This document shows, one piece after another, positions 29,501-64,000 of a DNA stretch of 64,000 nucleotides; positions within the stretch are counted from its first letter, which is position 1, and each line of letters begins with the position of its first letter. Source of the stretch: Ranitomeya imitator (taxonomy: Eukaryota); assembly GCF_032444005.1 (NCBI RefSeq), contig NC_091290.1, forward strand, positions 119,908,001-119,972,000, given 5' to 3'. The translations under genes were made by a program, and so were the position numbers. The notes under the pieces were generated by a model that was not told the origin of the DNA, did no database searches, and worked only from the letters and a program-made list of their open reading frames with translations.

Positions 29501-32500
29501 CGTGGGCGTAGCCATGTTTTGATTGGCCAATGTCAAAGGAAAAAAGGCATCTTCGTGGGCATAGCCATGTTTTGATTGGCCAGTGTCAAAGGAAAAAAGC
29601 ATCTTCGTGGGCATAGCCATGTTTTGATTGGCCAGTGTCAAAGGAAAAAAAGCATCTTCGTGGGCGTAGCCATGTTTTGATTGGCCAGTGTCAAAGGAAA
29701 AAAAGCATCTTCGTGGGCATAGCCATGTTTTGATTGGCCAGTGTCAAAGGAAAAAAGCATCTTCATGGGCATAGCTATGTTTTGATTGGCCAGTGTCAAA
29801 GGAAAAAAGCATCTTCATGGGCATAGCTATGTTTTGATTGGCCAGTGTCAAAGGAAAAAAGCATCTTCGTGGGCATAGCCATGTTTTGATTGGCCAGTGT
29901 CAGAGGAGAAAAAGCATCTTCATGGGCGTAGCCATGTTTTGATTGGCCAGTGTCAGAGGAGAAAAAGCATCTTCGTGGGCGTAGCCATGTTTTGATTGGC
30001 CAGTGTCAGAGGAGAAAAAGCATCTTCGTGGGCGTAGCCATGTTTTGATTGGCCAGTGTCAGAGGAGAAAAAGCATCTTCGTGGGCGTAGCCATGTTTTG
30101 ATTGGCCAGTGTCAAAGGAAAAAAGCATCTTCGTGGGTGTAGCCATGTTTTGATTGGCCAGTGTCAGAGGAAAAAAAAAGTAAACGCCCACAGAGAAGTT
30201 TTGTGGTTTACACCAAGTTTATTAAAGGGAAAATGTGCATCTTTAGTTCCATGGGGCATAACTTTGGAATGGATGGGCACAGAAGAAAAAGGAAAACTGT
30301 TCCAGAATCAGTGGTGCAGCGCCGATTCAAGAAGGTACTCAGTTTAAATAATAAAGAAAAATCCAATGAGAGGTCGTTTTTAAAATTCTGACTTTTTACA
30401 GCTTCACATGGGCTGTCATTTAACTTTCCAAGTCTCTAGAAATAAAAATCTACACAGTGATGTAATGATTAATCTTCTTCTTTCTTGAATTTGTATAACA
30501 AGGCAGATAAGCCTTACAGGAGTTTCTGAAAGCTAAAAGAAAACCCAGTGGGAGCTTCAATTACTGATTGAACGAACACAGGAAAAAAAACACATCTAAT
30601 GAGCGGGGAATTCCGAGATTACATTTTCCATTGACAAATTAAGATAAATACTCAAAGCAAAAATGTGGATAAAGCACACTTACTAAAAATCAGTCAGTCA
30701 GCCAGTCACCTGTGTTCTGTACGAGGCCAGATTTAAATATTGCAGATGTGGTGAAAGGGATCCTGCCGACTGATTCATTCTGCCCATGGTTTGTAATTGC
30801 AGCCAAGACCAACTTTGCAACTACGACCACGTTTCACACTGAATATCTGAACAGGGCAGATAATGCATCTAGGATGACTATTCCAAGAGGCAGGACCATG
30901 GCCGCTTCTGCACCCTCCAATCTTCTTGACTGATGGCTCTCTCCATATATACATAAACATTGGGAAAGACCTGTCAATGTAGGAGAGTGGGACTTGGAGA
31001 AAGCTTACATGGCTGCCATAATGGAGCCAGTGTCTGATTCATGCTGCTTGGTTCCTGGGAAACATGAATCATCTGCCAGGTTCCCTTTCGAGAAGTACCG
31101 TCCTCCCTCCTGGTACAGAACTATTACTATTGTGGTCTAGAAGAGTCATCACAAATTTTGGCACACAGAATAATTACTCCAAAAGAGTTTAGACTTTTCT
31201 GTATCCATGCCATTTTTTAATGTAGGAAGGGTTCGCGTAAATATTGTGACAACACTGAACCACAAGCAAACTTCCATGAGCAATCTCCTATGCTACTCTA
31301 AATTCTAGCATTAAAAAAAACAAACAAAAGTGGTGAAAAATAGGCAAATAAATAAATACATAAATAGGCATAAAAGGATACAAGGAGCGTGAGGAAAGAA
31401 CAATTGGTTTTCATAAAACAACCTGCTGTCGGGGGTAAAAGGGGTTATCCAAAACCAGAAAAACCCTTCAGGGTAGGTGCACACAATGTCTTTTAGACAC
31501 TGCTTTCCCATCGAGCGAAATGGTGGTGGTGTTTTTCCTGAATTGTCTTTTTTTGGCATTTTTGGGGCAACCACGGTGCCAGTGTTTTTTTTTTTTTTTC
31601 TTACAATAAGTATACAATAGTAAATGGCTTCCAAGTATAAGCTGTTTGACATATGGTTTTATCTCATCTTTTAACTTCTTTGCAGCTTTCAAAGTCAGAA
31701 GCGGTAAAAGGAATCTCAAAAAGACTGAACATATACACACCAAGCCGTTTTGACATTACAGTGCCTATACTCATTCTTTTTAGAATTTCAGAGGGGACCT
31801 TCCTGTATTAGACGTCATGTGCACATACCCTTAAAATATCCGTAAGGCTGTATTGAAAGTCAAAGGCCTAAAGAGTGTTCTCTTGGCTTCAGTCTGGTCA
31901 GAACACCTCAAAATCCCATAAAAAGAGTTTTTAGAAAATGTAGGAAAATTGGCTATTCCATTACCTGGGGTCCAATTAAAAAGAAAAAAAGGATATTTAA
32001 AACATATATCGTCAATATACCCTACAAAGAGGTTCTATAAAGTGTATGAAAATCAGCTATTCCATGACGTGGGGTCCAATTAAAAAGGAAAAAAGGTATA
32101 TTTAAAAGATATATCCTGTGGTCCAATTAAAAAAAAAAGGTATTTTTAAACATATATCGTCAATATACCATAAAAAGCGTGTCGGAGAATTGGCTATTCC
32201 ATTACGTCCAATTAAAAGAAAGGTAGATTTTATACATATATTTTGAATAACTATTTGTGAGAGATGCCACTATGACATCCTATAAATAGACATCTCATGT
32301 ACGTTTTTTTAATACAGTAGCTTTTTATTAGGTTTCCATCTAACAGATGCAATTGTAGCCTACCGGACTAGTCTTTAATCATAAACATACCTGACGCTGC
32401 AAGATTGAGGCAGCGTTCACATGCATACATGCTGCGACTGAACAACAGCAGCCTGGTGGTGCTGCTGTCTTTCCATTGTTTCACCTACAAAGCCTTGGGG

Positions 32501-35500: not shown

Positions 35501-38500
35501 TGGCTCTCCACACTTCAACCGCAAGTGTGTAAATTGGCAAGAATGAGCGTGAGTATCTGGTGCCTCCAAGACCCCCATAGACGCTGAAGACTAAACAAGT
35601 CGCAAGAATTTGGCAAATGATTTTCTGCTTTCCAGTGTTGTAGAAAGCAAAGTTGGTCATCTAAGTAGTATAAGAAGATGTGCGGGAGTGCCGCATCGGC
35701 CTCATCCCTGGTCCTCTGAGGAGTGGTCAGAATCAGCCCCATATGGAGGATGCTGAATGGGAGATGCTCATGGCAAAGACCTTCTGTGGGACGATGGAGG
35801 CTGAATGTTCCAGAACATACAGGAATTTAGGGAGGGCTATCATTTTAATGACATTGATTCTTCCAGCTATTGACAGAGGGAGGGCTCCCCATATTCGGAT
35901 TTCCACCCTCAGGTTTGGAAAAAAAAGGGGATATATTTAAATCACGAAGTTGAGTCTTTTTTTCATGTTTATATCTTAATATTTAAAGTGTGATAGTATC
36001 CGTAACCTGCAGAATTCATCCCCTACTTCCCATCCCATGGGGCTTAGAAGTGACAACATGGATTTTTGACAGTTTATGTTTAGACAGGAGAACCGGAAAA
36101 ATTCATCAATCAGATCCATTACCAGGGCAGCGTAACTCTTAGACTGGCCATAAACGGGATCCCAAGCGGTCTTCATGGGAACCCACTTTATCCCTTGTTA
36201 TCCTGCAATCTGACAGATCCTGGCCGCTAGTGGATCCATAGGTATCAGATTATGTTTAGCGAGAAAAATTAAAACTGAGCAGAAAAGTAAAAAAGGATAA
36301 AGGCAAGAATTGTATTCCTCACCTGACCTTTAAGCACAAGCTTTAAGGTGAATGAAATTAAATCTGTAAATAGTTGCTTAAACCATCCAGGCCTGCAAAA
36401 TAAAAAAATATATATATTTCTAAGAATAACAAAGTATTTTATATATGTTTTTAATAGAAATTTGATAACATCTTTGTATCTTACTGCTTGTCTCCATGAA
36501 GGTGTAAAATCAGTTCATGAAACGACAGGTAGCAGTCAGAAGTATCAGCAGCAATGCGGTTATTTCCACAAGCTGTAAAATACAAGGTCTGAAATGTAGT
36601 GCAAAATATAGTAATGCAACAGACAAAAACTGTAGAATATACGGTAATATAATAATATTATTATTATTATTATTATCAGCCACTATACAAAACTACAAAG
36701 CACTGATTAACCAATCAAAGGGCTGCCACATTCGTCACCGTGTCTGCAAACTGAGATTCTCTTTTGGCTTTTATCCTAAGTCATATTGCAAGGCTCGTTA
36801 AAGAAGCGATATTGACTTTTAGGATCGCTGCTTTCAACAGGTGTCGCTAGAGTTCTAGTTCTCTTCCTCTCTGAGTTTGCAAATTTTCCCACCTACAAAG
36901 AATGGAGAGGTCTGTCATTTTTGCAACTGTGAGAGACAGAATCTTACAAAAATCCAGAAAATCACATTGTATGATTTTTACATAATTAATTTGCATTTTA
37001 TTGCATGAAATAAGTTTTTGATACAATAGAAAAACAGAACTTAATATTTGGCACAGAAACCTTGGTTTGCAGTTACAAAGGTCAGACGTTTCCTGTAGTT
37101 CTTGACCAGGTTTGCACACACTGCAGAAGGGATTTTGGCCCCCTCCTCCATAAAGATCATCTTCAGATCTTTCAGCTTTCGGGGCTGTCGCTGAGCAACA
37201 TTGATTTTCAGCTCCCTCCAAAGATTTTCTACTTTGTTCACGTCTGGAAACTTACTAGGCCTCTCCAAGACCTTGAAATGTGTCTTACGGAGCTGTTCCT
37301 TAGTTGCCCTGGCTATCTGTTTTGGGTCATTGTCATGCTGGAAGACCCAGCCACAACCCATCTTCAATGCTCGTACTGAGGGAAGGAGGTTGTTTGCCAA
37401 AATCTCGCAATACATGACCACATCCTCCCTTCAATACAGTGCAGTCGTCCTGTCCCGTTTGCATAAAAGCACCCCCAAAGTATGATGTTTCCCCCACCAT
37501 GCTTCACAGTTGGGATGGTGTTCTGGGAGTTGTACTCATCTTTCTTCTTCCTCCAAGCACAGCAAGTGGTGTTGATACCAAAAAGTTCTATTTTGGTCTC
37601 ATCTGACCACATGATCTTTTCCCTTGCCTCCAATGGATCATCGAGATGGTTATTGGCAAACTTTTAACGGGCTTGGACATGTGCTGGTGTGAGCAGGGGG
37701 ACCTTGTGTGACCTGCAGGATTTTAATACATGATGGCGTAGTGTGTTACTAACATTTCTGTTTGAGACTGTGGTCCCAGCTCTCTTCAGGTCATTGACCA
37801 GGTCCTCCCGTGTAGTTCTGGGCTGATTCCTGAGCTTTCTCAGAATTATCCTTACCCCACCCCTCCCCCAGACGAGACCTTGCATAGAGCCCCAGACCTA
37901 GGAAGATTGACAGTCATCTCGTGTTTCTTCCAATAGTTGTGCTAATAGTTATGGTCTTCTCACGATGCTGCTTTCCTGTTGTCCTGTAGCCCATCGCAGC
38001 CTTGTGCAAGTCTACAATTTTGTCCCTGGTGTCCTTAGACGGCTCTTTGGTCTTGGCCATGGTGGAGAGGTTGGAATGTGTGGACAGGTGTCTTTCATAC
38101 AGCAGCTGTCCTGTAGCCCATCGCAGCCTTGTGCAAGTCTACAATTTTGTCCCTGGTGTCCTTAGACGGCTCTTTGGTCTTGGCCATGGTGGAGAGGTTG
38201 GAATGTGTGGACAGGTGTCTTTCATACAGGTGACGAGTACAAACGGATTCAATTAATACAGGTAATGAGTGCAGAGTAGTAGGACTTCTTAACAAAGAAC
38301 TAACAGGTCTGAGAGAGCCAGAATCCTTGCTGGTTGGTAGGTTATCAAATACTTATGCAATAAAATGCAGATTAATTACCGTATGTAAAAATCATACAAT
38401 GTGATTTTCTTTTCTTTTTTTACTATTAGATTCTGTCTCTAACAGATAAAAATTACAGACCTCGCCATTCTTTGTAGGTGGAAAAACTTGCAAAATCGGC

Positions 38501-44500: not shown

Positions 44501-45341
44501 TGAAGTGCTATGGTAGATCTGAAGCCTCTGTCACTCTAGCTCTATTCCGCACTCAAAGCTGCTTTCTCCTGCTTGACGGGATAGCCTCTATGCTGTGTGA
44601 AAGCAGGCAAAGGAGCTGTTGGTCAAACAGGAGGGGGAATAGAGCTGGAGAGACGGAGGATTCAGATCCACAAATAGCTCTTCAGCCTCATTTGCATATC
44701 TATTTAATTGCTGATTTTTAAAAAATACGATGAGCCTGCACAGAGAGTGGAGTATTGGATCAAACATATATATTGAATTTGTACAGTGGCGCGTGCATGC
44801 TCATCCAAGAACTGAGTGCTGCTGCATGCAGAAGAGAGTATCAGTGCAATATTTTGAGCTATTGGTGGTGGTCTCAGGAGCCGAATCCACACCAATTGGC
44901 AGCACATTTAGTTATGTAAAACATCTAAACAAAAAAATATATTAAAAGGATAATCAGCTATATATAATGTGATGAATCTGTACAGTGGCGCGTGCATGCT
45001 CATCCAAGAACTGAGTGCTGCTGCATGCAGAAGAGAGTATCAGTGCAATATTTTGAGCTATTGGTGGTGGTCTCAGGAGCCGAATCCACACCAATTGGCA
45101 GCACATTTAGTTATGTAAAACATCTGAACAAAAAAATATATTAAAAGGATAATCATCTATATATAATGTGATGGAGTGGAGCATGACAAGGTTCCCGAAG
45201 ATGACGCAATAACTTACACACTAATGCTGCTGGCTTTGTCACCCTGCAGACTATGCCCGTCTCTTGGGTGGATGATGGCGTAAACTCACAGGCTGATGAA
45301 ATTCTCAGAAAGTAGATTGTGACGAGGATCAGTGGCCACAT
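20505..45341 (-). CDS. CETP: Cholesteryl ester transfer protein, complete, 16 exons, 492 aa
   Basis: Exons 45341-45218, 42464-42350, 39238-39107, 38670-38600, 36572-36485, 36392-36323, 33581-33521, 32720-32629, 29175-28996, 28592-28542, 27289-27137, 26551-26484, 25948-25906, 22722-22653, 21670-21585, 20579-20505 (1479 nt, all GT-AG, phases consistent). Peptides [32 protein letters not shown] and [14 protein letters not shown]; many exon lengths (115, 71, 88, 70, 61, 92, 180, 51, 68, 86) equal those I recall for human CETP. AATAAA at 20422-20417. Exon 13 boundaries are the least certain. Confidence 0.96.
23071..24927. mobile_element. Solo LTR (about 647 bp net) interrupted by a second LTR
   Basis: TGTC...GACA termini; 5-bp TSD GTAAT (23066-23070) / GTCAT (24928-24932); flanks rejoin into the repeat seen uninterrupted at 36776-36800. 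Confidence 0.65.
23491..24696. mobile_element. Solo LTR, 1206 bp, Gypsy-like
   Basis: 11-bp inverted termini TGCAGCGCCCC...GGGGCGCTGCA and perfect 4-bp TSD CACG (23487-23490, 24697-24700); no coding remnants seen. Confidence 0.85.
27316..28491 (+). mobile_element. Tc1-family DNA transposon fossil, 5'-truncated, in CETP intron 10
   Basis: ORF 27600-28289 carries [21 protein letters not shown] and [11 protein letters not shown] (DD34E triad); N-terminal part is in another frame with an internal deletion; right end ...CCCACTG+TA at 28491. Confidence 0.92.
29351..30170 (+). repeat. 52-53-bp minisatellite x16, one CCAAT box per unit
   Basis: Unit TAGCCATGTTTTGATTGGCCAGTGTCAAAGGAAAAAAGCATCTTCGTGGGC(A/G). 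Confidence 0.95.
34440..36250 (-). mobile_element. Decayed L1-clade LINE ORF2 3' half in CETP intron 6
   Basis: Fragments [22 protein letters not shown] (late RT), GVLEAPD..(GLG.PD-like) and [25 protein letters not shown] (C-terminal Cys-His domain); many stops. Ends approximate. Confidence 0.78.
36873..38529 (-). mobile_element. Degenerate Tc1-family transposon with long TIRs in CETP intron 4
   Basis: Broken transposase pieces [43 protein letters not shown]; about 150-bp inverted arms at 36875-37023 and 38345-38490; end CCCCACTG+TA; internal 127-bp tandem duplication (37981/38108). Confidence 0.9.
39655..39875 (+). repeat. Degenerate (TAT)n microsatellite
   Basis: TAT/TTA runs with rare G or C. 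Confidence 0.9.
40743..40782 (-). ncRNA. Minimal hammerhead ribozyme motif in CETP intron 2 (sense to CETP)
   Basis: Minus strand CTTCT-CTGAAGA-A-GC-AACAAA-GC-GAAA-CGCGCG-TT-AGGGG: helix I 5 bp (2 GU), helix II only 2 bp, palindromic helix III, GUU triplet. Confidence 0.62.
41154..42096. mobile_element. Non-autonomous PIF/Harbinger-type DNA transposon
   Basis: TTA on both sides (41151-41153, 42097-42099); TIR GGCCCCCTTCACACGTC versus (reverse complement) GGGCTCTTTCACATGTC. Confidence 0.72.
42113..42307. mobile_element. hAT-type palindromic MITE
   Basis: TIR C(A/T)GGGGTGTCAAA, about 88-bp near-perfect arms, perfect 8-bp TSD TTGTACCC (42105-42112, 42308-42315). Confidence 0.88.
42590..43680 (+). 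repeat. Old degenerate ~120-bp tandem repeat in CETP intron 1
   Basis: Recurring TATTATTGGTAAT...TGTGCTTTGTT(C/T)TGTAGAAGTATGGTAATA...GTGG(A/G)AAT motifs. Confidence 0.7.
44468..44718. mobile_element. MITE-like inverted-repeat element carrying two octamer motifs
   Basis: AAATCAGC..GATATGCAAATGA and TCATTTGCATATC..GCTGATTT arms; ATGCAAAT at 44488 and ATTTGCAT at 44690. Confidence 0.5.
44781..45174 (+). repeat. Recent 199-bp tandem duplication
   Basis: GTACAGTGGCGCGTGCATGC... starts at 44781 and 44980; copies differ at only a few positions. Confidence 0.92.
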
Positions 45342-46501
45342 GGTGATGCTTCTGCACGGAGGCGGCGAGTGAGATCTGCTTCTAGTGCTCCAAAAAAAAT
45401 TACATAAAAAAAAAAAAAAAAATCACAGGAAACTACACACTTCCTTTGTGTTAGGAAGGGGCACAGGGTTATAGCCAGTTATTACAATTGCTGGAAATGG
45501 GTCACACAAAGTAACAGAATATTACACATCTGCAAAGTTTACTAAAGTTTACAAAGCAGCAAAAACTAAATGCGATTATGGTCGTGGTGCACTTACGGTC
45601 ATTTTTTTATTTTTATTTCAAAGAAAGTTCATCTAAAGGGTTTCCTAGAACTGTTGCAAAAGTCAGCAAAAACACTCCCAAAAGGTACTATTGCCAAAAA
45701 CAAAAGCCCGTGCACATAGTGATTCCAGTATATTGTGTCAAGTACCGCTCATATAACAGGGTGGTGGTCCACCTGAGGATTCTCCTATTCTCCTGTGGGC
45801 TAGTCCAAGCCTGGCTCGGAGAACAAAAGGATCAGGAATTGTAAAAATAAATAAATAAAAATAAATCAACAAAATTGTCCAATTTTAATGTGTGTGTCGG
45901 AGGTTTTTACATCACCCCTGTAGAAATGTTTAAGGCAATGTTCCCATGTGCAAAAGCACTTTTCTCCTGCACTTGTCTACTCAAAATTGCGCAATTGCAA
46001 TTTGCTTGATTGCCGCATCACCACCCCAGATTTTTTTTTTTTAAATTTGCAGTTTGTAAGAGACATTTATTTAATGCAGGAACAAAAAAAAGTTCAGTAG
46101 CATTTGGGCATTAGTTTTCATGAAATGTCAAAATGCATATTTTCTGCACAAAAAAAAAAAAAATATTGCAGGTCTCGCTCATATGTGGATTGTGTATATT
46201 TATCTTTTAGTTTGCATTAGGAATCAGTGGCACATATTGCTGATAACGAGTGGAAATCTTTGTTTTCTGTCATATTCCCATTTAGCGGAAATACTTTTTT
46301 CCTGTCCCTAGTAATTACCTTGCAAGACCCCGTCTTCCGATGTTCTTGGTGCAGCTCTGGTCGTCTTCTGCCAGTTGTCATCTGCCAGATTGGTCCGATG
46401 TTTGCTGAGTCTATGCGAGCTAGAACGTGGCTTTCAGTCTTGGCCAGGTGCAGACAATCTTTTATTCTCTCAGCTGAGAGAATTGGGTGATTATGTGGTT
46501 C

Positions 46502-49500
46502 TTTAAATCACCATTTCAAGTTTTCTGCTAATTACATTTCAGTGCACAGGGGCCAGATTGTGCATTGGGTTTTCTCCTCCTTTCTGTCATTCCCCGCCCC
46601 TCCGCCTTCGTCTGTGCTCAGCAGGTCACGGCTAAGATTTCAAACAGAGGCCGCAAATCATTCAAAGACAGGAAGCAGGCGGAGGGGGGCGGGGAATCAC
46701 AGACCGGAGGCAGGCGGAGGGGGGCGGAGAATCACAGACCGGAGGCAGGCAGAAGGGGGCGGGGAATCACAGACAGGAGGCAGGCGGAGGGGGGCGGAGA
46801 ATCACAGACAGGAGGCAGGCAGAAGGGGGCGGGGAATCACAGACAGGAGGCAGGCAGAAGGGGGCGGGGAATCACAGACAGGAGGCAGGCAGAGGGGGCG
46901 GGGAATCACAGACAGGAGGCAGGCAGAGGGGGCGGGGAATCACAGACAGGAGGCAGGCAGAGGGGGCGGGGAATCACAGACAGGAGGCAGGCAGAAGGGG
47001 GCGGGGAATCACAGACAGGAGGCAGGCGGAGGGGGGCGGAGAATCACAGACAGGAGGCAGGCAGAAGGGGGCGGGGAATCACAGACAGGAGGCAGGCAGA
47101 AGGGGGCGGGGAATCACAGACAGGAGGCAGGCAGAGGGGGCGGGGAATCACAGACAGGAGGCAGGCAGAGGGGGCGGGGAATCACAGACAGGAGGCAGGC
47201 AGAGGGGGCGGGGAATCACAGACAGGAGGCAGGCAGAAGGGGGCGGGGAATCACAGACAGGAGGCAGGCGGAGGGGGGCGGGGAATCACAGACAGGAGGC
47301 AGGCGGAGGGGGGCGGAGAATCACAGACAGGAGGCAGGCAGAGGGGGCGGGGAATCACAGACAGGAGGCAGGCAGAGGGGGGGCGGGGAATCACAGACAG
47401 GAGGCAGGCAGAGGGGGCGGGGAATCAGACAGGAGGCAGGCAGAGGGGGGCGGGGAATCACAGACACGAGGCAGGCGGAGGGGGCCGAGGAATCAGACAG
47501 GAGGCAGGCGGAGGGGACCGTGGAATCACAGACTGGAGGCAGGCGGAGGGGACCGTGGAATCACAGACTGGAGGCAGGCGGAGGGGACCGTGGAATCACA
47601 GACTGGAGGCAGGCGGAGGGGACCGTCGAATCACAGAATGGAGGCAGAGGGGCTGGGGAATCACAGACAGGAGGCAGCCGGAGGGGGGCGGGGAATCACA
47701 GACAGGAGGCAGGCAGAGGGGGTTGGGGAATCACAGACAGGAGGCAGCCGGAGGGGGGCAGGGAATCACAGACAGGAGGCAGCCGGAGAGGGGTGGGGAA
47801 TCACAGACCGGAGGCAGGCGGAGGGCGACGTGGAATCACAGACCGGAGGCAGGCGGAGGGCGACGTGGAATCACAGACAGGAGGCAGCCGGGGGGGTGGG
47901 GATTCACAGACAGGAAGCAGGGAGGGGGGGGGGGTGGAGAATCACATATAGGAGGCAGGCGGAGGGGGCGGGGAATTAGACAGGAGGCAGGCGGAGGGGG
48001 CGGGGAATCACAGACAGGAGGCAGGCAGAGGGGGCGGGGAATTAGGAGGCAGGCGGAGGGGCGGGGAATCACAGACAGAAGGCGAATCAGACACGAGGCA
48101 GGTGGAGGCAGGCGGAGAATCACAGACAGGAAGCAGGTGGAAGGAGGCAGTGAATCACAGATAGGAGACAGATGGAGGGGGTGGGGAATCACAGATAGGA
48201 GGCAGGCGGAGGGGGCGGAGAAGCACAGACACGAGGCAGGCGGAGGGGGCCGAGGAATCACAGACAGGAGGCAGGCGGAGGGGACCGGGGAATCACAGAA
48301 TGGAGGCAGGCGGAGGGGACCGTTGAATCACAGAACGGAGGCTGACAGAGGGGCCGGGGAATCACAGACAGGAGGCAGGCAGAGGGGGCGGGGAATCATA
48401 GACAGGAGGCAGGCAGAGGGGGGTGGGGAATCAGACAGGAGGCAGCTGGAGGGGGCGGAGAATCATAGACAGGAGGCAGGCAGAGGGGGCCAGGGAATCA
48501 CAGACAGGAGGCAGGCAGAGGGGGCGGGGAATCAGACAGGAGGCAGGCAGAGGGGGGCGGGGAATCACAGACAGGAGGCAGGCAGAGGGGGCGGGGAATC
48601 CCAGACAGAAGGCAGAGGGGGGCGGGGAGTCACAAACAGGAGGCAGGCAGAGGGGCGGGGAATCAGACAGGAGGCAGCTGGAGGGGGCAGGGAATCACAG
48701 ATAGGAGGCAGGCAGAGGGGGTGAGGAGGCAGGCAGAGGGGGCGGGGAATCACAGAAAGGAGGCAGGCGTAGGGGGTGGGGAATCACAGACAGGAGGCAG
48801 AGGGGCAGGGAATCAGACAGGAGGCATCCGGAGAGGGGCGGGGAATCACAGACAGAAGGCAGAGGGGGGGCGGGGAGTCACAAACAGGAGGCAGGCAGAG
48901 GGGCGGGGAATCAGACAGGAGGCATCCGGAGAGGGGCGGGGAATCACAGATAGGAGGCAGGCAGAGGGGGCGGGGAATCACAGACAGGAGGCAGGCAGAG
49001 GGGGGCGGGGAATTAGACAGGAGGCAGGCGGAGGGGGCGGGGAATCACAGACAGGAGGCAGGCAGAGGGGGCGGGGAATTAGGAGGCAGGCGGAGGGGCG
49101 GGGAATCACAGACAGAAGGCGAATCAGACACGAGGCAGGTGGAGGCAGGCGGAGAATCACAGACAGGAAGCAGGTGGAAGGAGGCAGTGAATCACAGATA
49201 GGAGACAGATGGAGGGGGTGGGGAATCACAGATAGGAGGCAGGCGGAGGGGGCGGAGAAGCACAGACACGAGGCAGGCGGAGGGGGCCGAGGAATCACAG
49301 ACAGGAGGCAGGCGGAGGGGACCGGGGAATCACAGAATGGAGGCAGGCGGAGGGGACCGTTGAATCACAGAACGGAGGCTGACAGAGGGGCCGGGGAATC
49401 ACAGACAGGAGGCAGGCAGAGGGGGCGGGGAATCATAGACAGGAGGCAGGCAGAGGGGGGTGGGGAATCAGACAGGAGGCAGCTGGAGGGGGCGGAGAAT

Positions 49501-52140
49501 CATAGACAGGAGGCAGGCAGAGGGGGCCAGGGAATCACAGACAGGAGGCAGGCAGAGGGGGCGGGGAATCAGACAGGAGGCAGGCAGAGGGGGGCGGGGA
49601 ATCACAGACAGGAGGCAGGCAGAGGGGGCGGGGAATCCCAGACAGAAGGCAGAGGGGGGCGGGGAGTCACAAACAGGAGGCAGGCAGAGGGGCGGGGAAT
49701 CAGACAGGAGGCAGCTGGAGGGGGCAGGGAATCACAGATAGGAGGCAGGCAGAGGGGGTGAGGAGGCAGGCAGAGGGGGCGGGGAATCACAGAAAGGAGG
49801 CAGGCGTAGGGGGTGGGGAATCACAGACAGGAGGCAGAGGGGCAGGGAATCAGACAGGAGGCATCCGGAGAGGGGCGGGGAATCACAGACAGAAGGCAGA
49901 GGGGGGGCGGGGAGTCACAAACAGGAGGCAGGCAGAGGGGCGGGGAATCAGACAGGAGGCATCCGGAGAGGGGCGGGGAATCACAGATAGGAGGCAGGCA
50001 GAGGGGGCGGGGAATCACAGACAGGAGGCAGGCAGAGGGGGGCGGGGAATTAGACAGGAGGCAGGCGGAGGGGGCGGGGAATCACAGACAGGAGGCAGGC
50101 AGAGGGGGCGGGGAATTAGGAGGCAGGCGGAGGGGCGGGGAATCACAGACAGAAGGCGAATCAGACACGAGGCAGGTGGAGGCAGGCGGAGAATCACAGA
50201 CAGGAAGCAGGTGGAAGGAGGCAGTGAATCACAGATAGGAGACAGATGGAGGGGGTGGGGAATCACAGATAGGAGGCAGGCGGAGGGGGCGGAGAAGCAC
50301 AGACACGAGGCAGGCGGAGGGGGCCGAGGAATCACAGACAGGAGGCAGGCGGAGGGGACCGGGGAATCACAGAATGGAGGCAGGCGGAGGGGACCGTTGA
50401 ATCACAGAACGGAGGCTGACAGAGGGGCCGGGGAATCACAGACAGGAGGCAGGCAGAGGGGGCGGGGAATCATAGACAGGAGGCAGGCAGAGGGGGGTGG
50501 GGAATCAGACAGGAGGCAGCTGGAGGGGGCGGAGAATCATAGACAGGAGGCAGGCAGAGGGGGCCAGGGAATCACAGACAGGAGGCAGGCAGAGGGGGCG
50601 GGGAATCAGACAGGAGGCAGGCAGAGGGGGGCGGGGAATCACAGACAGGAGGCAGGCAGAGGGGGCGGGGAATCCCAGACAGAAGGCAGAGGGGGGCGGG
50701 GAGTCACAAACAGGAGGCAGGCAGAGGGGCGGGGAATCAGACAGGAGGCAGCTGGAGGGGGCAGGGAATCACAGATAGGAGGCAGGCAGAGGGGGTGAGG
50801 AGGCAGGCAGAGGGGGCGGGGAATCACAGAAAGGAGGCAGGCGTAGGGGGTGGGGAATCACAGACAGGAGGCAGAGGGGCAGGGAATCAGACAGGAGGCA
50901 TCCGGAGAGGGGCGGGGAATCACAGACAGAAGGCAGAGGGGGGGCGGGGAGTCACAAACAGGAGGCAGGCAGAGGGGCGGGGAATCAGACAGGAGGCATC
51001 CGGAGAGGGGCGGGGAATCACAGATAGGAGGCAGGCAGAGGGGGCGGGGAATCACAGACAGGAGGCAGGCAGAGGGGGGCGGGGAATTAGACAGGAGGCA
51101 GCTGGAGAATCACATATAGGAGGCAGGCAGAGGGGGCGGGGAATTACACAGGAGGCAGGCAGAGGGGGGGTGGGGAATCAGACAGGAGGCAGGTGGAGGG
51201 GCAGAGGAATCACAGAAAGGAGGCAGGCAGAGGGGGCAGAGGAATCACAGAAAGGAGGCAGGCAGAGGGGGGCGGGGAATCAGACAGAAGGCAGCTGGAG
51301 GGGGGGCAAGGAATCACAGATAGGAGGCAGGCAGGGGGGGTGAGGAGGCAGGCAGAGGGGGCGGGGAATCACAGAGAGGAGGCAGGCGGAGGGGGCGGGG
51401 AATCACAGACAGGAGGCAGGCAGAGGGGCGGGGAATCAGACAGGAGGCAGCTAGAGGGGGGCGGGGAATCACAGATAGGAGGCAGGCAGAGGGGGCGGGG
51501 AATCAGACAGGAGGCATCCGGAGAGGGGCGGGGAATCACAGATAGGAGGCAGGCAGAGGGGCAGGGAATCAGACAGGAGGCAGCTAGAGGGGGGCGGGGA
51601 ATCACAGATAGGAGGCAGGCAGAGGGGGCGGGGAATCAGACAGGAGGCATCCGGAGAGGGGCGGGGAATCACAGATAGGAGGCAGGCAGAGGGGCAGGGA
51701 ATCAGACAGGAGGCATCCGGAGAGGGGCGGGGAATCACAGATAGGAGGCAGGCAGAGGGGGCGGGGAATCAGACAGGAGGCATCCGGAGAGGGGCGGGGA
51801 ATCACAGATAGGAGGCAGGCAGAGGGGCGAGGAATCAGACAGGAGGCAGCTGGAGGGGGGCGGGGAAATCACAGATAGGAGGCAGGCAGAGGGGCAGGGA
51901 ATCAGACAGGAGGCATCCGGAGAGGGGCGGGGAATCACGGATAGGAGGCAGGCAGAGGGGGCGGGGAATCACTGACAGGAGCAGACAAAGAAAGCTGGGG
52001 AAATCACAGAACGCAGGCAGGCGGAAATCACAGCCAGGAGCAGGCCGAGGAATCACAGACAGGGATGAGAAGATCCAGTGTACGGTCCGGCCCCTCTGCA
52101 CCGAAATCCAATTAGCAGAAAGCTTGAGATGGTGATTAAA
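46502..52140. mobile_element. Foldback/MITE-like element with ~100-bp terminal inverted repeats enclosing a satellite
   Basis: 46502-46606 aligns to the reverse complement of about 52044-52140 (TTTA(A)ATCACCATYTCAAGYTTTCTGCTAATT...GTGCASAGGGGCC), roughly 75-80% identical by eye. Confidence 0.7.
46670..52060 (+). repeat. 5.4-kb purine/G-rich minisatellite (30-35 bp unit GGGGAATCACAGACAGGAGGCAGGCAGAGGGGGC) with a 1037-bp higher-order repeat
   Basis: Unit directly visible, about 160 copies; the variant marker AATTAGACAG recurs at 47974, 49011, 50048 and 51085. Confidence 0.95.
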
Positions 52141-53639
52141 TAACAACAACAATGCGGATTTCTTCACCAAAGATATGAATGTACCGTAATCAGTATTACA
52201 GGCATGTCTTTCCAAAATTCATGTCGACATGTTCTCTTTAATTGACGTTAACCTGGAGAACCAGTCCGCTAATTGCTCTAGGCAGTTATTTCCATGTAGA
52301 TAAATTATAGTCTGATCTTCATGAATTTTTACAAGAAACTATGGGAGTCAATGATGAGTGAGTGCCAGGTAGGAAACCTTTCCCCTCGTCTTCCTGGGAT
52401 CCCAGGATTATGTATTGTTCTATGTTCATTGGTGGAGAATTAGTGTGCGTGGGAGGGTTGTCGATCAAGAAAGAAAAAATAAATATATAGCATGTTCTAC
52501 CTACGAGTACATTGAGTGCCGAAGACCCCGAAAACTTTAATTAGGATCAATTGGAGGAAAACCATCTCAGCTATTCAGAGGAGCAGGAGTTATAAGAGTC
52601 GCTGTCAAACTCTGACATCTCCTTATCACCTGGAGCATAAAATGACTGGTCACTACCAATGCAACAGGAAAGATCATTCTACTCTATCAGGGAGAGTCTG
52701 GTGTTCCCCTGTAATTATAAAAAAACAAACAAAAAACAAACAAACAAAAAAACACACATTGAAACTACAGCAAGATGAATCCCCAAAATGGTAACTTGTT
52801 ATTCATAGATAAAGCCAGAAACAATTTCAAATACAACCTCAATTTAAAAAAAAACAAAAAAAAACAGACAAGTTTCAGACATTACTCCTTAGGCAACGAG
52901 TAAGGACTGTCTGAAAAGTGTGAGTATGTGTTTTTTTTTTTTTTTTAAAAAACGTTCAACTTCGATTTTTTTCTGGCTTTTTCTATAAACATTAAGTTAC
53001 CATTTTAAGGATTCACCTTGCTGGAATTTACATTTTTTCTGCTATACTGCAAGACTTCCATGCAATTTTGATCTGTATTCTCTCAGGTTGGCAGATCGTC
53101 TCCTGGTTTTTTGTTCACATGTCTCCGAGCGTTCCCCAACTCCAGACTGTGTTTTCAGAAATCTACTTACTATTGCACAGGTGATCATTTCATTTCTTTT
53201 GTGATATCAAGGTAATCCTGAAGACAAAGTCTGCTGGACCTTGAAGACTGGAGTTGGAGGAACACAGTATAAGGACACAGTCAGACGGATGTATAAATCT
53301 GTATGCGATACACGCACTGGTAGGTGGCTCTCCAAACTTGCCAACCCCGCAACATTTCAGAGTAAAACATATTTGTCAGCTTCCTACCGCCTCATAGAAG
53401 CATTAATTGGATGACAGGTTCCCTTTAATATAGTGAGCACATGTATTAGCGTAACGCCAAGCATCGCAGCCCCAGGAGATCCTACATCCACGTCAATAAA
53501 CATAGCAACTAAGCACTATACAAAGCATTTCAATTTATTGAAAGTATTCATTAAAGTGCAGGCTTGTGCATAAAATATGAGCACAAAGGGAAAAAAATAT
53601 TTTGAAATGCAAAGTAGCATACCGATAATATCGAAGTCT

Positions 53640-54305
53640 GCTCCGCAGCCAACCGAGCTCATGGCAAGACTGGCCGGTATGCTAGACTGGTTATGGCAGC
53701 CGACCGAGCTCATGGCAAGACTGGCCAGTATGCCAGATGGGTTATGGCAGCCCACCGAGCTCATGGCAAAGACTGGCCAGTATGCTAGATGGGTTACGGC
53801 AGCCGGCCGAGCTCAAGGCAAGACTGGCCAGTATGCTAGATGGGTTACGACAGCTGACCGATCTCATGGCAAGACTGGCCAGTATACTAGACTGGTTACA
53901 GCAGCCGACCAAGCTTATGGCAAGACTGGCCAGTATGCTAGACTGGTTACGGCAGCCGACCGAGCTCATGGCAAGACTGGCCAGTATGCTAGACTGGTTA
54001 CGGCAGCCGACTGAGCTCAAGGCAACACTGGCCAGTATGCTAGATGGGTTACGACAGCTGACCGATCTCATGGCAAGACTGGCCAGTATACTAGACTGGT
54101 TACAGCAGCCGACCAAGCTTATGGCAAGACTGGCCAGTATACTAGACTGGTTACGGCAGCCGACCAAGCTCATGGCAAGACTGGCCAGTATGCTAGATGG
54201 GTTACGGCAGCTGAACGAGCTCATGGCAAGACTGGCCAGTAATCTAGATGGTTACGGCAGCCGACCAAGCTCAGGGCAAGACTGGCCGGTATGCTAGATG
54301 GGTTA
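53640..54305 (+). repeat. 51-bp minisatellite x13, probably in the HERPUD1 3' UTR
   Basis: Unit GGCAGCCGACCGAGCTCATGGCAAGACTGGCCAGTATGCTAGACTGGTTAC; a variant block recurs at 204-bp spacing (53811/54015). Confidence 0.95.
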
Positions 54306-54583
54306 CCGTTTGTAAACCTTAACACTACAATTAGTGTAAATTATGCAGATATTCCACAAGGAATCAAATGACATGAGCAGAGTGGGGAAAGGGGTTCTGC
54401 TCAGATTTATAGTTGCGTACACCTCTTTGGACTTGTATAAAAAGTAAGAAATCCATCTCAGATCGTCTTCCCCGAAACACTACGAAGCATCGGTCCCTTG
54501 ATCAGGCCAACGCTCGCCACGTAGAAGGTGGAAGACTAGAAGCATGCGGCTCGAAGTCCGAACGTCCATTATTGATTCTAACA

Positions 54584-57500: not shown

Positions 57501-60217
57501 AGGAGGACTGGTGGCCGTAGCAGCGGCGGCAGCATAGCTATAGGGCAAGGACAAAAAGTTACAAAAAAAGCACAAGTAATCTCACAAAAGTAAACTTAAA
57601 GCAATTAACCCCCTCTCCCACCTTGGGCAAAAACCCCAATTATAAAGCAAACTACCGCATGGATGCCACCATCAGATATACAGGTACTTACTACTGCATA
57701 TAGTACTGTCTGGCGTACATCTGCTGCAGCCATATGATCTGCTGCGGGCTGTACACCGAGAACGGGGAGAAAGAAGAAGCATTTACGTCTTCAGAGCTTT
57801 AAAGAAAAGAGAAGTTGATATTAATCTCTAATAAGACGTAGCAGTAATCTGAGCAATAATCTGCGTCACCGGTATGTGTCATAAGTACCCGGGTGTGTCT
57901 ATTTGTGCCGCGGGAGAACTCTGTGGGACGATCCGCTGTCTGATGCCGTCCGCCGGAGGAGCGGAGGGGCTGGGTGAGCCATGCCCCTCCGTGCCCGCTG
58001 TAGGCTGCTGTTTGCTTTCCTGAGTCTGAAAGCAATTAAGGTAATTAGCGAAAAAGTCCAGTGACATTAGGGGATTTTACACTAACAACTAGTGCAACCT
58101 ATTAGGCAAATCTGGATCTTTGTCCCAAGCAAAGCCGAACGGCACTAAACAGAATTTAAGCGTGGCCGTCATTTCACAATAAGCTGTAACAATCATTCTG
58201 GCTATTATAGGACTTGTATCCTGCCGTTTGTCCGGGGCTAGAGAGTGGAATTTAGCTGCTATAATGTCTTCTATACAGAGCACATAGACATCTGCTCTCC
58301 TGTGTGTATATAGCACAGTACAGATAGCATAATACACAAGGACTGAACTGTGTAGCTGTGAATCCCCGCACCGCGTAGCTGCCAATCCTCGCCACCGCAC
58401 AGCTGCCAGTCCCCGCCACCGCACAGCTGCCATTACCCGCCACCGCGTAAGCTGAAAAATCCCACATTGTGTAAGCTGCAAATCCCCCACTGTGTAAGCT
58501 GCAAATCCCACACTGTGTAGCTGTGAATCCTGCACTGAAGAAGACACTTGGTAGAATTTGCAGCGCGGTCTTCCTCCCCCTCCGTATAGTTCAGTTGACC
58601 ATCGCACGTGTCACCCCATCCTCAGGGTTCTGGGATTACACTGTGCCATTGGGTTGATATGCACCTGGGTATCTAATAAGGTGCTTAGAACTGCACTACG
58701 TTTTACAGAATGAAGGATTTAAGAAATAAATAAGAATAATCACATTACCTGGTTGTGCACAGCACTTCTAATGGAGCAGACAAGGTGCAATACATGCCGG
58801 ACTTCCTGCAAACCAAAAACAAACAGGACTACATGAACAGCGCCTGATTGAATGAAGTGGCGCCGACAGCAACGCCCGGGCAGCAGATCTTTACCTTGGA
58901 CAGGACCTCATCCAGCTTCAGATGGTCGGGAAGGAGCTTTCCCGAATAGATCAGGCGCTGTTCTTGTTCCATCTGCAGATCGAAAAAAAAAAAAAGAACA
59001 GATGTCAGTTTTGTACCAGCGACGAAGTGTAACTTACAGCACAGGAGGGGCACGGATCTCCGGGAGCTTGTGTAGCTAAGCCGGCAGATTCCCTACTATG
59101 AGGGGCTCTGATCCAAAAATTCATAAGGCGAAGGTTTCACATTGCCCAGGGCTGATCCTCATGGGGTGCTCCCAGTCTGTGTCATGTAGACTCCTGGCAT
59201 CATGGCTGCCATCGCTGATCAGTGTCGCCAACAGTACAGCATGTGACCAAGACGGGGGGCGACAGGGTCAGCAACATGCACATGTATTTACAAAGTTGCC
59301 AAATGTTAGATCCATAGACATGAAGAAACCGAAGATCTGTGGCTTATAGGCTCTGAAGACTGATTTGGGGGATTTCCTGAAAGAAAGTCCGGCAGCCATA
59401 TGTCGCCCTATTGCCCCGTGCATGGATGATCACAATACCGGGGGCATTTGGCTCTCTTCACCATCACCTAACAGGACAAACTGATGATCGGGCAATGACG
59501 TGGCTTCTGTGTGTTACATAGCCGGCACCAGATGCCACCCATGTAGCTCAAACCCCCATAGCCGGCACCAGATGCCCCCTAGCTAGCTCAGACCCCCATA
59601 GCCGGCATCAGATGCCCCCCAGCTAGCTCAGACCTTCATAGCCAGCACGAGATTCCACCCAGCTAGCTCAGACCTTCATAGCCAGCACCAGATGCCACCC
59701 AGCTAGCTCAGACCCCCATAGCCGGCACCAGATGCCCCCCAGCTAGCTCAGACCCCCATAGCCGGCACCAGATGCCCCCCAGCTAGCTCAGACCCCCATA
59801 GCCAGCACCAGATGCCCCCCAGCTAGCTCAGACCCCCATAGCTGGCACCAGATGCCACCCAGCTAGTACAGACCCCCATAGCCGGCACCAGATGCCACCC
59901 AGCTAGCTCAGACCCCCATAACCGGCACCAGATGCCCCCCAGCTAGCTCAGACCCCCATAGCCAGCACCAGATGCCCCCCAGCTAGCTCAGATCCCCATA
60001 GCTGGCACCAGATGCCACCCTGCTAGCTCAGACCCCCATAGCCGGCACCAGATGCCCCCCAGCTAGCTCAGACCCCCAAAAGCTAACACCCTAAATGCCA
60101 TGGAATACAGTGACAGTGACATTTAAAGGGACCCCATTTGGTGCTGATCTGTCGCCTATTGGAGCCCACTCCCAGCGTCCGCCATGTTACTGCAATAGTA
60201 CAAGGAACCAATTAAAA

Positions 60218-61449: not shown

Positions 61450-62200
61450 ACCAAACAATAATGTCCCCATCCTGAGCCTCTTCATCGTATAATATGCCCC
61501 TTCCAATAATAATGCCCCCATTCTCAGGGCCTTTTACAGTAATACCCACCATGTTGTGCCGCTTCCAATAATGTCCCCCATTCTGGGCCCTATCTGGTAA
61601 TAATGTTCTCCAGTCCTGGGCCCCTTCCAGTAATAATATCCCCCATTCTGGGCCCTTTCTGGTAGTGTCCCCCATTATGTGCCCCTTCCAATAATAGCGT
61701 CCCCCATTCTGGGCCCTTTCCGGTAATGTTCAAACTTCTGGCCCCCTTGGTGGTATAATGTCCCCCAACCTAGGCCCCTTCCAGTAATAATGTCCCCCAT
61801 TCTGTGCCCCTTCCAATAATAATGTTCCACATCCTGTACCTCTTCTGGTAATAATTTCCCTAATCCTGGCTCACTTCCTGTAATAATGTCTCCATCCTAA
61901 CCCCCTTACTGCTATATCCCCATCCTGATATAATGTCCCCCAACGTGGGCCCCTTCCAGTAATAATGTCCCCCATTCTGTGCCCCTTCCAATAATAATGT
62001 TCCACATCCTGTGCCTCTTCGGGTAGTAATTTCCCTCATCCTGGCTCACTTCCTGTAATAATGTCTCCATCCTAACCCCCTTACTGCTGTATCCCCATCC
62101 TGATATAATGTCCGCCTACCTGGGCTCCTTTCATTAATTAGTAATAACGGGCCCTTCCTGGCGTAATGTCCCCATCCTGTAATAATACTCCCATTCTGCC
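61450..62200 (+). repeat. Degenerate ~40-bp tandem repeats upstream of HERPUD1
   Basis: Recurring GCCCCTTCCARTAATAATGTCCCCCATTCTG. Confidence 0.8.
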
Positions 62201-63219: not shown

Positions 63220-64000
63220 GACTCGGCCATTGGGGAATATTCCACTTGGGTCAATGTTCTGTCCTGTGATGCTCAGTCCAATCAACCTTGTTGCATTTGG
63301 TTGAATCTGAGCAAAGTATCGTCCTGTATGCTTCAGAATTCATCCGGCTGCTTCTGTTTTCAGTCACATCATCAATAATCACTAGTGACTCGGTGCCATT
63401 GGAAGCCATGCATGTCCGCACCATCATATGGCCTCCACTATGCTTCACAGGGGATGTGCTGTTCTTTGGATCGTGAGCCATTCCAAGCCTTCTCTGTACT
63501 ATTTTCTAAACATCATTCTGGCACAGGTTGATCATCGTTTCATCTGTCCATAGAATGGTTTTCCAGAACTGGACGGCTTTTGTTTTTGGCAAACTCTAAT
63601 CTGGCACTAATTTTAAGGCTGATTAAAGGTTTGTACCTTGTAGTGACCCCTCTGTATTTGCGCTCATGAAGTCTCTTTATGTTAGACTTAGATAGTGAAA
63701 CACCTACTTCCTGGAGAGTGTCCTTTACTTGGGGGGGATGTTGTGGAGGGATGTTCTTCACCAGGGAAAGGATTCTGTGATCATCCACCACTGTTGTATT
63801 CCATGGAGGTCCAGGCCTTTTTAAGTTCTTCTTTCTTTTTGCAGTACGTACCAAACTGATGAGTTGCCCACTCCTAATATTTCTGCTATTTCTGTGATGG
63901 ATTGCTCCTTTTTTTCTAGCCTAATGATGATTTGTTTCTCTTCCATTGAGAGCTCTTTTGACAGCATGTTGTGGGTTCACAGCAACAGCTTCCAAATGCA
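63220..64000 (-). mobile_element. Tc1 transposase fossil, continues past the window end
   Basis: ORF fragments VKHSGGHMMV..CMASNGT, RKYRGVTTRYKPLISLK..RLEFAK and a decayed W(T)DET motif. Confidence 0.82.

What the first reader, a model, noticed from the sequence alone, without database searches (positions are those of the whole stretch)
46502..52140. A 5.4-kb satellite grown inside one arm of a foldback-like transposon
The array is enclosed by ~100-bp inverted repeats. The left repeat ends in one inverted copy of the satellite monomer (CTGTCATTCCCCGCCCCTCCGCC, 46584-46606), while the right repeat grades into about 160 direct copies. The monomer therefore looks like a subterminal repeat of the element that amplified on one side only: a snapshot of satellite birth from a DNA transposon. 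It sits about 1.2 kb upstream of the CETP start codon.
Basis: partly seen in the sequence, partly recalled or inferred. Interest (0 to 1): 0.7.

Follow-up and report, generated by a model that had tools for sequence, protein, structure and literature searches.

The report
Hairpin-element minisatellite upstream of frog CETP
A 5.4-kb tandem repeat just upstream of a poison frog's CETP gene grew from a short motif belonging to one arm of a small hairpin-shaped, transposon-like element; this route to new repeats is already known from frogs and flies, and I could not prove that this element ever moved.

Summary
A 35-bp, G-rich minisatellite (about 157 units, 46656-52062) lies between two inverted arms of about 100 bp (46503-46603 and 52037-52140; 80 matches, 18 mismatches, 3 gap columns). 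The left arm ends in one inverted unit. The right arm runs in register into the array through three decayed 24-35-bp units. So the repeat unit is part of the arm sequence, and it expanded on one side only.

The array is layered: a 242-bp higher-order repeat, three mismatch-free 1037-bp copies, and a 133-bp higher-order repeat. The frame is old (arms 18% diverged) and the growth is very young.

The element starts 1162 bp upstream of the CETP start codon (45341, minus strand), between HERPUD1 and CETP.

The transposon reading is plausible but not proven:
- No second copy turned up in the window or in any collection I could reach.
- The candidate target-site duplication (TAA, TTAA or TTAAA) lies in a near-palindromic TTTAAA, so it may simply be part of the inverted repeat.

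The kind is known (Xstir/Xmix and miDNA4 in Xenopus, Tetris in Drosophila). Earlier notes of this scan describe similar transposon-born minisatellites elsewhere in this genome. Interest is low to moderate.

The parts
46503..46603 (+). Left inverted arm (candidate left terminal inverted repeat).
   Evidence: Pairs with 52037-52140: 80 matches, 18 mismatches (12 transitions, 6 transversions), 3 gap columns. No shuffle out of 500 reached the score.
46576..46617 (-). One inverted copy of the repeat unit plus a partial second, forming the inner end of the left arm.
   Evidence: It is the only minus-strand match to the unit core in the window. It is 88-93% identical to array units.
46618..46655 (.). 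Short unique centre between the inverted unit and the first direct unit; it would be the hairpin apex.
   Evidence: Sequence read. No significant pairing with the right side. It forms the loop in the fold of the hypothetical unexpanded form.
46656..47455 (+). Array zone A: near-consensus 34-36-bp units after a decayed first unit, organised as a 242-bp (7-unit) higher-order repeat.
   Evidence: Unit list. Best lag is 242 bp, with a 299-bp exact repeat from 46741-47039 to 46983-47281.
47456..47963 (+). Array zone B: more varied 30-35-bp units.
47964..51101 (+). Array zone C: 3.03 tandem copies of a 1037-bp higher-order unit (about 30 units each) with no mismatch.
   Evidence: Identity at lag 1037 is 1.000 over 2101 positions.
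51102..51342 (+). Array zone D: short varied stretch.
51343..51966 (+). Array zone E: alternating 33- and 34-bp units, seen as a 67-bp dimer and a 133-bp higher-order repeat.
   Evidence: Tandem Repeats Finder gives period 67, 9.5 copies, 91% matches. Identity at lag 133 is 0.853.
51967..52062 (+). Array zone F: three decayed units (35, 24 and 25 bp) and a last partial unit that overlaps the inner end of the right arm. This is the oldest edge of the array.
   Evidence: Unit list. Only 68-74% identical to array units.
52037..52140 (-). Right inverted arm (candidate right terminal inverted repeat).
46503..46507 (.). Left candidate target-site duplication: TAA at 46504-46506, TTAA at 46503-46506 or TTAAA at 46503-46507.
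   Evidence: Read. It lies in a near-palindromic TTTAAA, so it may be part of the inverted repeat instead.
52136..52140 (.). Right candidate target-site duplication: TAA at 52137-52139, TTAA at 52136-52139 or TTAAA at 52136-52140.
   Evidence: Read. The same caveat applies.
45213..45341 (-). CETP exon 1; the element starts 1162 bp upstream of its ATG.
   Evidence: Open frame. tblastn with dendrobatid CETP proteins places residues 1-43 at 45341-45213, 88-91% identical.

Best explanation
This is an old, small, non-coding element shaped like a hairpin. It has two arms of about 100 bp, each carrying at its inner end short repeats of roughly 25-28 bp, around a centre of about 40 bp. It sits in the HERPUD1-CETP intergenic region of a dendrobatid frog. 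Most likely it is a non-autonomous DNA transposon (a MITE or foldback-like element) that inserted at a TAA/TTAA-type site.

The inner repeats of the right arm then multiplied by replication slippage and unequal exchange between sister chromatids or homologues. The result is a 5.4-kb, roughly 157-unit minisatellite. The unit lengthened to 33-35 bp, and blocks of 7, 4 and about 30 units were copied again as higher-order repeats. The latest step made three identical 1037-bp copies.

Shown: the anatomy, the unit belonging to the arm, the one-sided growth, and the layered recent amplification. Inferred: that the element was mobile, the target-site duplication, and the slippage or unequal-exchange mechanism. 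No effect on CETP is shown.
For: The inverted arms are significant and their outer boundary falls within about 10 bp. The inverted unit is contiguous with the left arm and the array is in register with the right arm.

The hypothetical unexpanded form, 268 nt, folds into an almost complete hairpin as DNA (-66 kcal/mol, z = -8.8 against shuffles).

The flanks can be read as a TAA or TTAAA duplication.

Decayed units sit at both array edges, and homogeneous units and exact higher-order copies sit inside. That pattern is the known signature of unequal exchange in tandem arrays.

The same window holds a second minisatellite bounded by unrelated inverted arms (29251-29317 / 30267-30333 around the 53-bp array 29345-30176). 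It also holds a 270-bp hairpin element at 52762-53029. Small hairpin elements, with and without arrays, are therefore common here.

Published precedents in frogs and flies: Xstir/Xmix and miDNA4 (PMC12628747, PMC6004289) and Tetris (PMC4079207).
Against: No second copy of the arms was found anywhere I could search. These searches cover the window but not the rest of the frog genome, so the blank is weak evidence.

The candidate target-site duplication lies in a near-palindromic TTTAAA and could be part of the inverted repeat.

The termini fit neither Kolobok/T2-MITE (AGGRR after TTAA) nor, from general knowledge, piggyBac (CCC...GGG).

The arms differ by 18%, with only 3 of 18 differences being CpG transitions. 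That is old for a lineage-specific insertion, unless the arms were already imperfect when the element inserted.
Confidence: 0.6

Rival explanations
1. A local inverted duplication, not a transposon. A minisatellite already existed here. A fold-back or template-switch repair event copied its right edge (about one unit plus about 78 bp of flank) in inverted orientation to the other side of the array. The arms would be unique to this locus.
For: No other copy of the arms was found. The apparent target-site duplication is explained by the near-palindromic TTTAAA without any transposition. The arm includes array-edge sequence, as this model needs.
Against: The arms would have been identical at birth. 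Their 18% divergence then makes the event very old, on the order of 100 million years at about 1e-9 substitutions per site per year, a rate taken from general knowledge. Yet both arms still end within about 10 bp of each other. The left arm is separated from the direct array by a unique centre of about 40 bp, which a simple fold-back of the edge does not predict. A second, unrelated array bounded by inverted arms in the same window fits a class of elements better than repeated accidents.
Confidence: 0.22
2. Two independent insertions of one dispersed repeat, in opposite orientation, each carrying the unit at one end. The array grew from the right-hand copy. The pair is not one element.
For: The arms share only about 100 bp and differ by 18%. 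No unambiguous common target-site duplication ties the two ends together.
Against: Both copies would have to be cut at the same inner and outer points and lie about 40 bp apart before the expansion. The unexpanded form folds as one tidy hairpin. There are no solo copies in the window.
Confidence: 0.1
3. The array is kept for a function. It would be a block of GC boxes (86 perfect GGGGCGGGG, the Sp1/KLF consensus by general knowledge) acting as a promoter-proximal regulatory or unmethylated island for CETP or HERPUD1. Its origin in a repeat element would be incidental.
For: It lies 1.2-6.8 kb upstream of CETP. It is 65% G+C and holds 195 CpG, 86 perfect GC boxes and 102 CAGAC motifs.
Against: CpG observed/expected is only 0.44. 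Three identical 1037-bp copies and variable unit lengths show rapid neutral turnover. Earlier notes of this scan list many similar large minisatellites near other promoters in this genome. No expression, binding or conservation data could be obtained.
Confidence: 0.06

Closest known systems
Xstir / Xmix (T2-MITE, Kolobok-related) of Xenopus
   Same: A frog MITE whose internal segment was amplified into tandem arrays. MITE-only, array-only and composite forms are described (PMC12628747; PMC6004289).
   Different: T2-MITEs have a TTAA target and a terminal AGGRR motif. Here the ends read (A)TCACCAT. Xstir is a high-copy dispersed family, whereas only one locus is known here. Here the amplified piece is the repeat at the inner end of one arm.
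miDNA4 (Tc1/mariner MITE with an internal satellite) of Xenopus
   Same: A MITE that carries a repeat present either as a single unit or as an array of variable copy number. It has been proposed to decay into satellite arrays that lack inverted ends (PMC12628747).
   Different: miDNA4 is thought to have captured a pre-existing repeat in its interior, and it has TA-type Tc1/mariner ends. Here the unit is present in both arms in mirror orientation, and no TA duplication fits.
Tetris, a foldback transposon of Drosophila virilis
   Same: A non-autonomous foldback-like element whose arm-internal tandem repeats served as building blocks for kb-size arrays (PMC4079207).
   Different: Tetris repeats are about 220 bp, occur in both arms and spread as satellite-like arrays in beta-heterochromatin. 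Here the unit is 35 bp, only one arm grew, and the locus is euchromatic and intergenic.
DTC84 / pearl-type tandem-repeat-containing MITEs of bivalves
   Same: Short inverted-repeat flanks form a 'cassette' around a central array of variable copy number (PMC3879986).
   Different: Those carry up to about five core repeats of a longer unit, have an AA duplication and are high-copy. Here there are about 157 units at one locus.
Ordinary promoter-proximal minisatellites (VNTRs)
   Same: Unit size, kb length, higher-order structure, G-rich strand bias, and decayed edges around a homogeneous core.
   Different: This array is framed by inverted arms that contain the founding unit, so its seed can be read directly.

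Membership tests
MITE / non-autonomous DNA transposon | Terminal inverted repeats | tested here: met
   Arms of about 100 bp, 80 of 98 aligned positions identical, E 4e-19, no shuffle out of 500 as good.
MITE / non-autonomous DNA transposon | Target-site duplication directly outside the terminal repeats | tested here: inconclusive
   TAA/TAA, TTAAA/TTAAA, or TTAA with a one-base offset all fit. All lie in a near-palindromic TTTAAA that can equally be read as part of the inverted repeat.
MITE / non-autonomous DNA transposon | Multiple dispersed copies in the genome | not testable with these tools
   None in the 64-kb window, even with a profile of the arms.
MITE / non-autonomous DNA transposon | Small and non-coding | tested here: met
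   The inferred unexpanded form is about 268 bp. Open frames across the array and arm have no Pfam match and no homologues. Unit lengths of 33-36 bp keep no reading frame.
Foldback (FB-type) elements | Long arms built mostly of tandem subrepeats on both sides | tested here: not met
   The left arm has one unit plus a fragment. Only the right side is repetitive.
Kolobok / T2-MITE | TTAA target plus terminal AGGRR (or AG/RR) | tested here: not met
   TTAA is possible only with a one-base offset between the two ends. The termini read ATCACC/TCACC, not AGG.
piggyBac | TTAA target with CCC...GGG termini (general knowledge) | tested here: not met
   The termini read (A)TCACCAT...ATGGTGA(T).
PIF/Harbinger-derived (Tourist-like) MITE | 3-bp TAA/TTA duplication (general knowledge) | tested here: inconclusive
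   TAA fits on both sides with symmetric ATCACC...GGTGAT ends, but this is not unique evidence. No transposase partner or family consensus was available to compare.
Minisatellite (VNTR) | Head-to-tail units of 10-100 bp, kb-size array, one orientation | tested here: met
   35-bp period, 157 copies, 5.4 kb, all direct units on the + strand.

The most novel reading that the evidence does not exclude
The hairpin itself may nucleate the array. Here the array begins at the apex of the foldback and is most homogeneous on the apex side. A second, unrelated array bounded by inverted arms in the same window also sits between its arms. If stalled replication at such hairpins drives slippage between the inner-arm repeats, small foldback elements would be a general seeding device for the many kb-size minisatellites of large frog genomes. 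Some of these land next to promoters: this one places 86 perfect Sp1/KLF-type GC boxes 1.2 kb from CETP.
Probability: 0.15. Interest if true: 0.55.

Novelty: new member of a known kind. Interest (0 to 1): 0.3.

Why it matters
It is a clean single-locus example in which the seed of a large minisatellite can still be read. The founding unit survives, inverted, in the opposite arm. Decayed early units survive next to the right arm. The latest growth steps, three identical 1037-bp blocks, are still visible.

This helps explain how repeat-rich frog genomes generate kb-size arrays. It also gives a natural length-variable block of GC boxes next to a lipid-transfer gene, which could be tested for an effect on expression. 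It does not change what is known about transposon-to-satellite transitions.

Tried and rejected
Copy number, population length variation and RNA evidence are all missing.

2. Orthologous loci: I found frog CETP proteins by searching one exon by reference and then full-length hits.

3. Protein-level search with the 126-aa open frame across the right arm: no hit.

4. Exact-pattern scans with the conserved outer arm: metagenome contigs gave 0 hits, then one 22-bp chance hit (L001) that does not extend. Prokaryote genome contigs gave 0. None of these collections holds frog genomes, so the blanks mean little.

5. Rfam: no RNA family in 45000-54500.

6. Earlier-findings look-ups by sequence and by relatives: blank.

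7. Extension of the arms inward and outward: not significant.

8. A coding reading of the long open frames: rejected. There is no Pfam match, the unit lengths are not multiples of three, and the frames stay open only because T is 5% of the + strand.

9. A canonical G-quadruplex array: rejected. Only one motif has loops of 7 nt or less; 64 appear only if loops up to 30 nt are allowed.
Full report
**What is there**

Tandem Repeats Finder reports one array at 46662-51981 with period 35 and 157.4 copies. Splitting it at the AATCA anchor of each unit places the first recognisable unit at 46656 and the last partial one at 52051-52062. The array is therefore 5407 bp.

A 25-nt core of the unit matches 98 times in the window with up to 3 mismatches, against 0 expected by chance. 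97 matches are on the + strand. The only - strand match is at 46576-46600. The + strand of the array is 49% G, 29% A, 17% C and 5% T. G+C is 65%, there are 195 CpG (observed/expected 0.44) and 86 perfect GGGGCGGGG.

**The arms**

The repeat finder pairs 46503-46580 with 52063-52140 (78 nt, 81% complementary). With gaps, the pairing runs from 46503 to about 46603 on the left and from 52140 to 52037 on the right. It has 80 matches, 18 mismatches (12 transitions and 6 transversions, of which 3 are CpG transitions) and 3 gap columns. BLAST gives E 4e-19, and no shuffle out of 500 reached the score.

Extension further inward (p about 0.1) or outward (p about 0.38) is not significant. A 9-bp outward extension to 46494/52148 appears under one scoring scheme but is marginal.

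**The unit belongs to the arm**

The inner 25-40 bp of the left arm (46576-46617) is an inverted unit plus a fragment, 88-93% identical to array units. On the right, the array runs in register through three decayed units (51967, 35 bp; 52002, 24 bp; 52026, 25 bp). It ends in a final partial unit at 52051, which is already part of the inverted repeat.

Between the inverted unit and the first direct unit lies a unique centre of about 40 bp (46618-46655).

If the array is removed, the remaining 268 nt fold as single-stranded DNA into an almost complete hairpin (-66 kcal/mol, z = -8.8 against shuffles). This joined form is hypothetical. I built it in a script from two window stretches.

**How the array grew**

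The array has zones:
- **Zone A (46656-47455):** near-consensus 34-36-bp units in a 242-bp, 7-unit higher-order repeat, with 299 bp repeated exactly.
- **Zone B (47456-47963):** varied units.
- **Zone C (47964-51101):** 3.03 copies of a 1037-bp block of about 30 units, without a single mismatch.
- **Zone D (51102-51342):** a short varied stretch.
- **Zone E (51343-51966):** alternating 33- and 34-bp units with a 133-bp higher-order period.
- **Zone F (51967-52062):** the decayed short units next to the right arm.

Decayed edges, a homogeneous interior and nested exact higher-order copies are the classic picture of replication slippage and unequal exchange. That mechanism rests on established knowledge, not on a test here.

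The short edge units (24-25 bp) and the roughly 27-bp unit of the left arm suggest that the founding repeat was shorter than today's 33-35-bp unit. This is an inference.

The frame is old, since the arms are 18% diverged. If the arms were identical at birth and evolved at about 1e-9 per site per year (general knowledge), they would be on the order of 100 million years old. This is an upper bound, because MITE arms are often imperfect at insertion. The last growth steps are very recent, as the zero mismatches among the 1037-bp copies show.

**Setting**

CETP lies on the minus strand. Exon 1 begins at 45341. tblastn with CETP of Phyllobates terribilis, Dendrobates tinctorius, Anomaloglossus, Bufo and Mixophyes finds 13-15 exons from 45341 down to about 20508, at 85, 87, 80, 75 and 70% identity respectively. 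The window therefore comes from a dendrobatid that is neither of the two sequenced ones; earlier notes call it the mimic poison frog.

HERPUD1 is also on the minus strand, further right. The element thus lies in the HERPUD1-CETP intergenic region, 1162 bp upstream of the CETP ATG. On the CETP sense strand the array is C-rich.

**Is it a transposon?**

This is the weak point. The ends can be read in three self-consistent ways:
- a 3-bp TAA duplication with ends ATCACC...GGTGAT;
- a 5-bp TTAAA duplication with ends TCACC...GGTGA;
- TTAA with a one-base offset between the two ends.

All three sit in a near-palindromic TTTAAA, which reads alike on both sides of any inverted repeat. The duplication is therefore not independent evidence.

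The ends do not fit Kolobok/T2-MITE (TTAA plus AGGRR, PMC6004289) or piggyBac (general knowledge). TAA would fit PIF/Harbinger-type MITEs, but nothing else ties the element to that superfamily.

No other copy of the arms exists in the window, even with a two-sequence profile run with all filters off. At a genome size of several gigabases this says little unless the family has well over 100,000 copies.

**Routes that were closed**

By then I had identified dendrobatid CETP proteins by an exon-by-reference search. I left out the step of joining the exons into a spliced model.
- A protein search with the open frame across the right arm was blank.
- Pattern scans of metagenome and prokaryote contigs gave only one 22-bp chance match.
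- Rfam and Pfam found nothing.
- Look-ups in the scan's own notes by sequence and by relatives were blank.

**Context that favours a mobile-element origin**

Of five other arrays in the window that I checked for flanking inverted repeats, one has them: the 53-bp array at 29345-30176 in a CETP intron. It lies between unrelated inverted arms (29251-29317 / 30267-30333, 67 nt, 82%, with weaker pairing further out). A 270-bp self-complementary element lies at 52762-53029, 620 bp to the right of the element studied here.

Earlier notes of this scan, which I did not test, describe similar cases on other pieces of this genome. They include a Tc1 terminal-repeat piece grown into a 3-kb minisatellite with the ancestral unit kept in the other terminal repeat, a 7-kb element with terminal inverted repeats carrying a minisatellite, and foldback elements with satellite arms. 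The scan has therefore met this kind before, though not this sequence.

**Comparison with what is known**

Growth of tandem arrays from the interior or arms of MITEs and foldback elements is well described:
- Xstir/Xmix and miDNA4 in Xenopus (reviewed in PMC12628747; PMC6004289);
- Tetris in Drosophila virilis (PMC4079207);
- DTC84 and pearl-type elements in bivalves (PMC3879986).

This locus works like those. It cannot be filed in any of those families, and it fails the tests for the FB type (repeats on one side only), Kolobok/T2 and piggyBac. Its particular features are the strictly one-sided growth, the mirror copy of the founding unit in the other arm, and its position next to a gene start.

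**Function**

Nothing shows a function. The GC-box content and the closeness to CETP allow a regulatory reading. Against it stand the low CpG ratio, the rapid turnover, and the many comparable arrays near other promoters in this genome. These point to a tolerated by-product.

**Verdict**

My estimates are:
- about 0.6 for a transposon-like hairpin element with one-sided expansion of its inner-arm repeat;
- about 0.22 for a local inverted duplication;
- about 0.1 for two separate insertions;
- about 0.06 for a maintained regulatory array.

It is a new member of a known kind, and interest is 0.3.

Noticed in passing
window 29224-30385: A second minisatellite framed by inverted arms. The 53-bp array (15.8 copies, with a 158-bp higher-order period) at 29345-30176 in a CETP intron lies between arms 29251-29317 and 30267-30333 (67 nt, 82%), with weaker pairing at 29224-29257 / 30352-30385. 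These arms are unrelated to those of the element studied here.
   Followed up: partly
window 52762-53029: A self-complementary stretch of about 270 bp (73% over 276 columns, E 1e-38). It is a small hairpin, MITE-like element 620 bp right of the studied element, about the size inferred for the studied element's unexpanded form. It has no detectable sequence similarity to the arms.
   Followed up: partly
window 46464-46483: A perfect 20-bp palindrome (centre CAGCTG) 20 bp outside the left end of the element. Its meaning is unknown.
   Followed up: no
window 44774-45173: A 199-bp tandem duplication (2.0 copies, 98% identical) in CETP intron 1, starting about 40 bp downstream of exon 1.
   Followed up: no
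window 53645-54306: A 51-bp minisatellite (13 copies, 88% matches) between the element and the 3' end of HERPUD1. No flanking inverted repeat was found.
   Followed up: partly
window 37044-38352 and 63540-63967: Tc1/mariner-like transposase open frames on the minus strand: one in a CETP intron and one near the right end of the window. A 127-bp exact duplication lies at 37980-38229.
   Followed up: no
window 59517-60078 and 61495-62138: Further minisatellites (40 bp, 14 copies; 32/61/175-bp compound) near the 5' part of HERPUD1. The window as a whole is unusually rich in kb-size tandem arrays.
   Followed up: no
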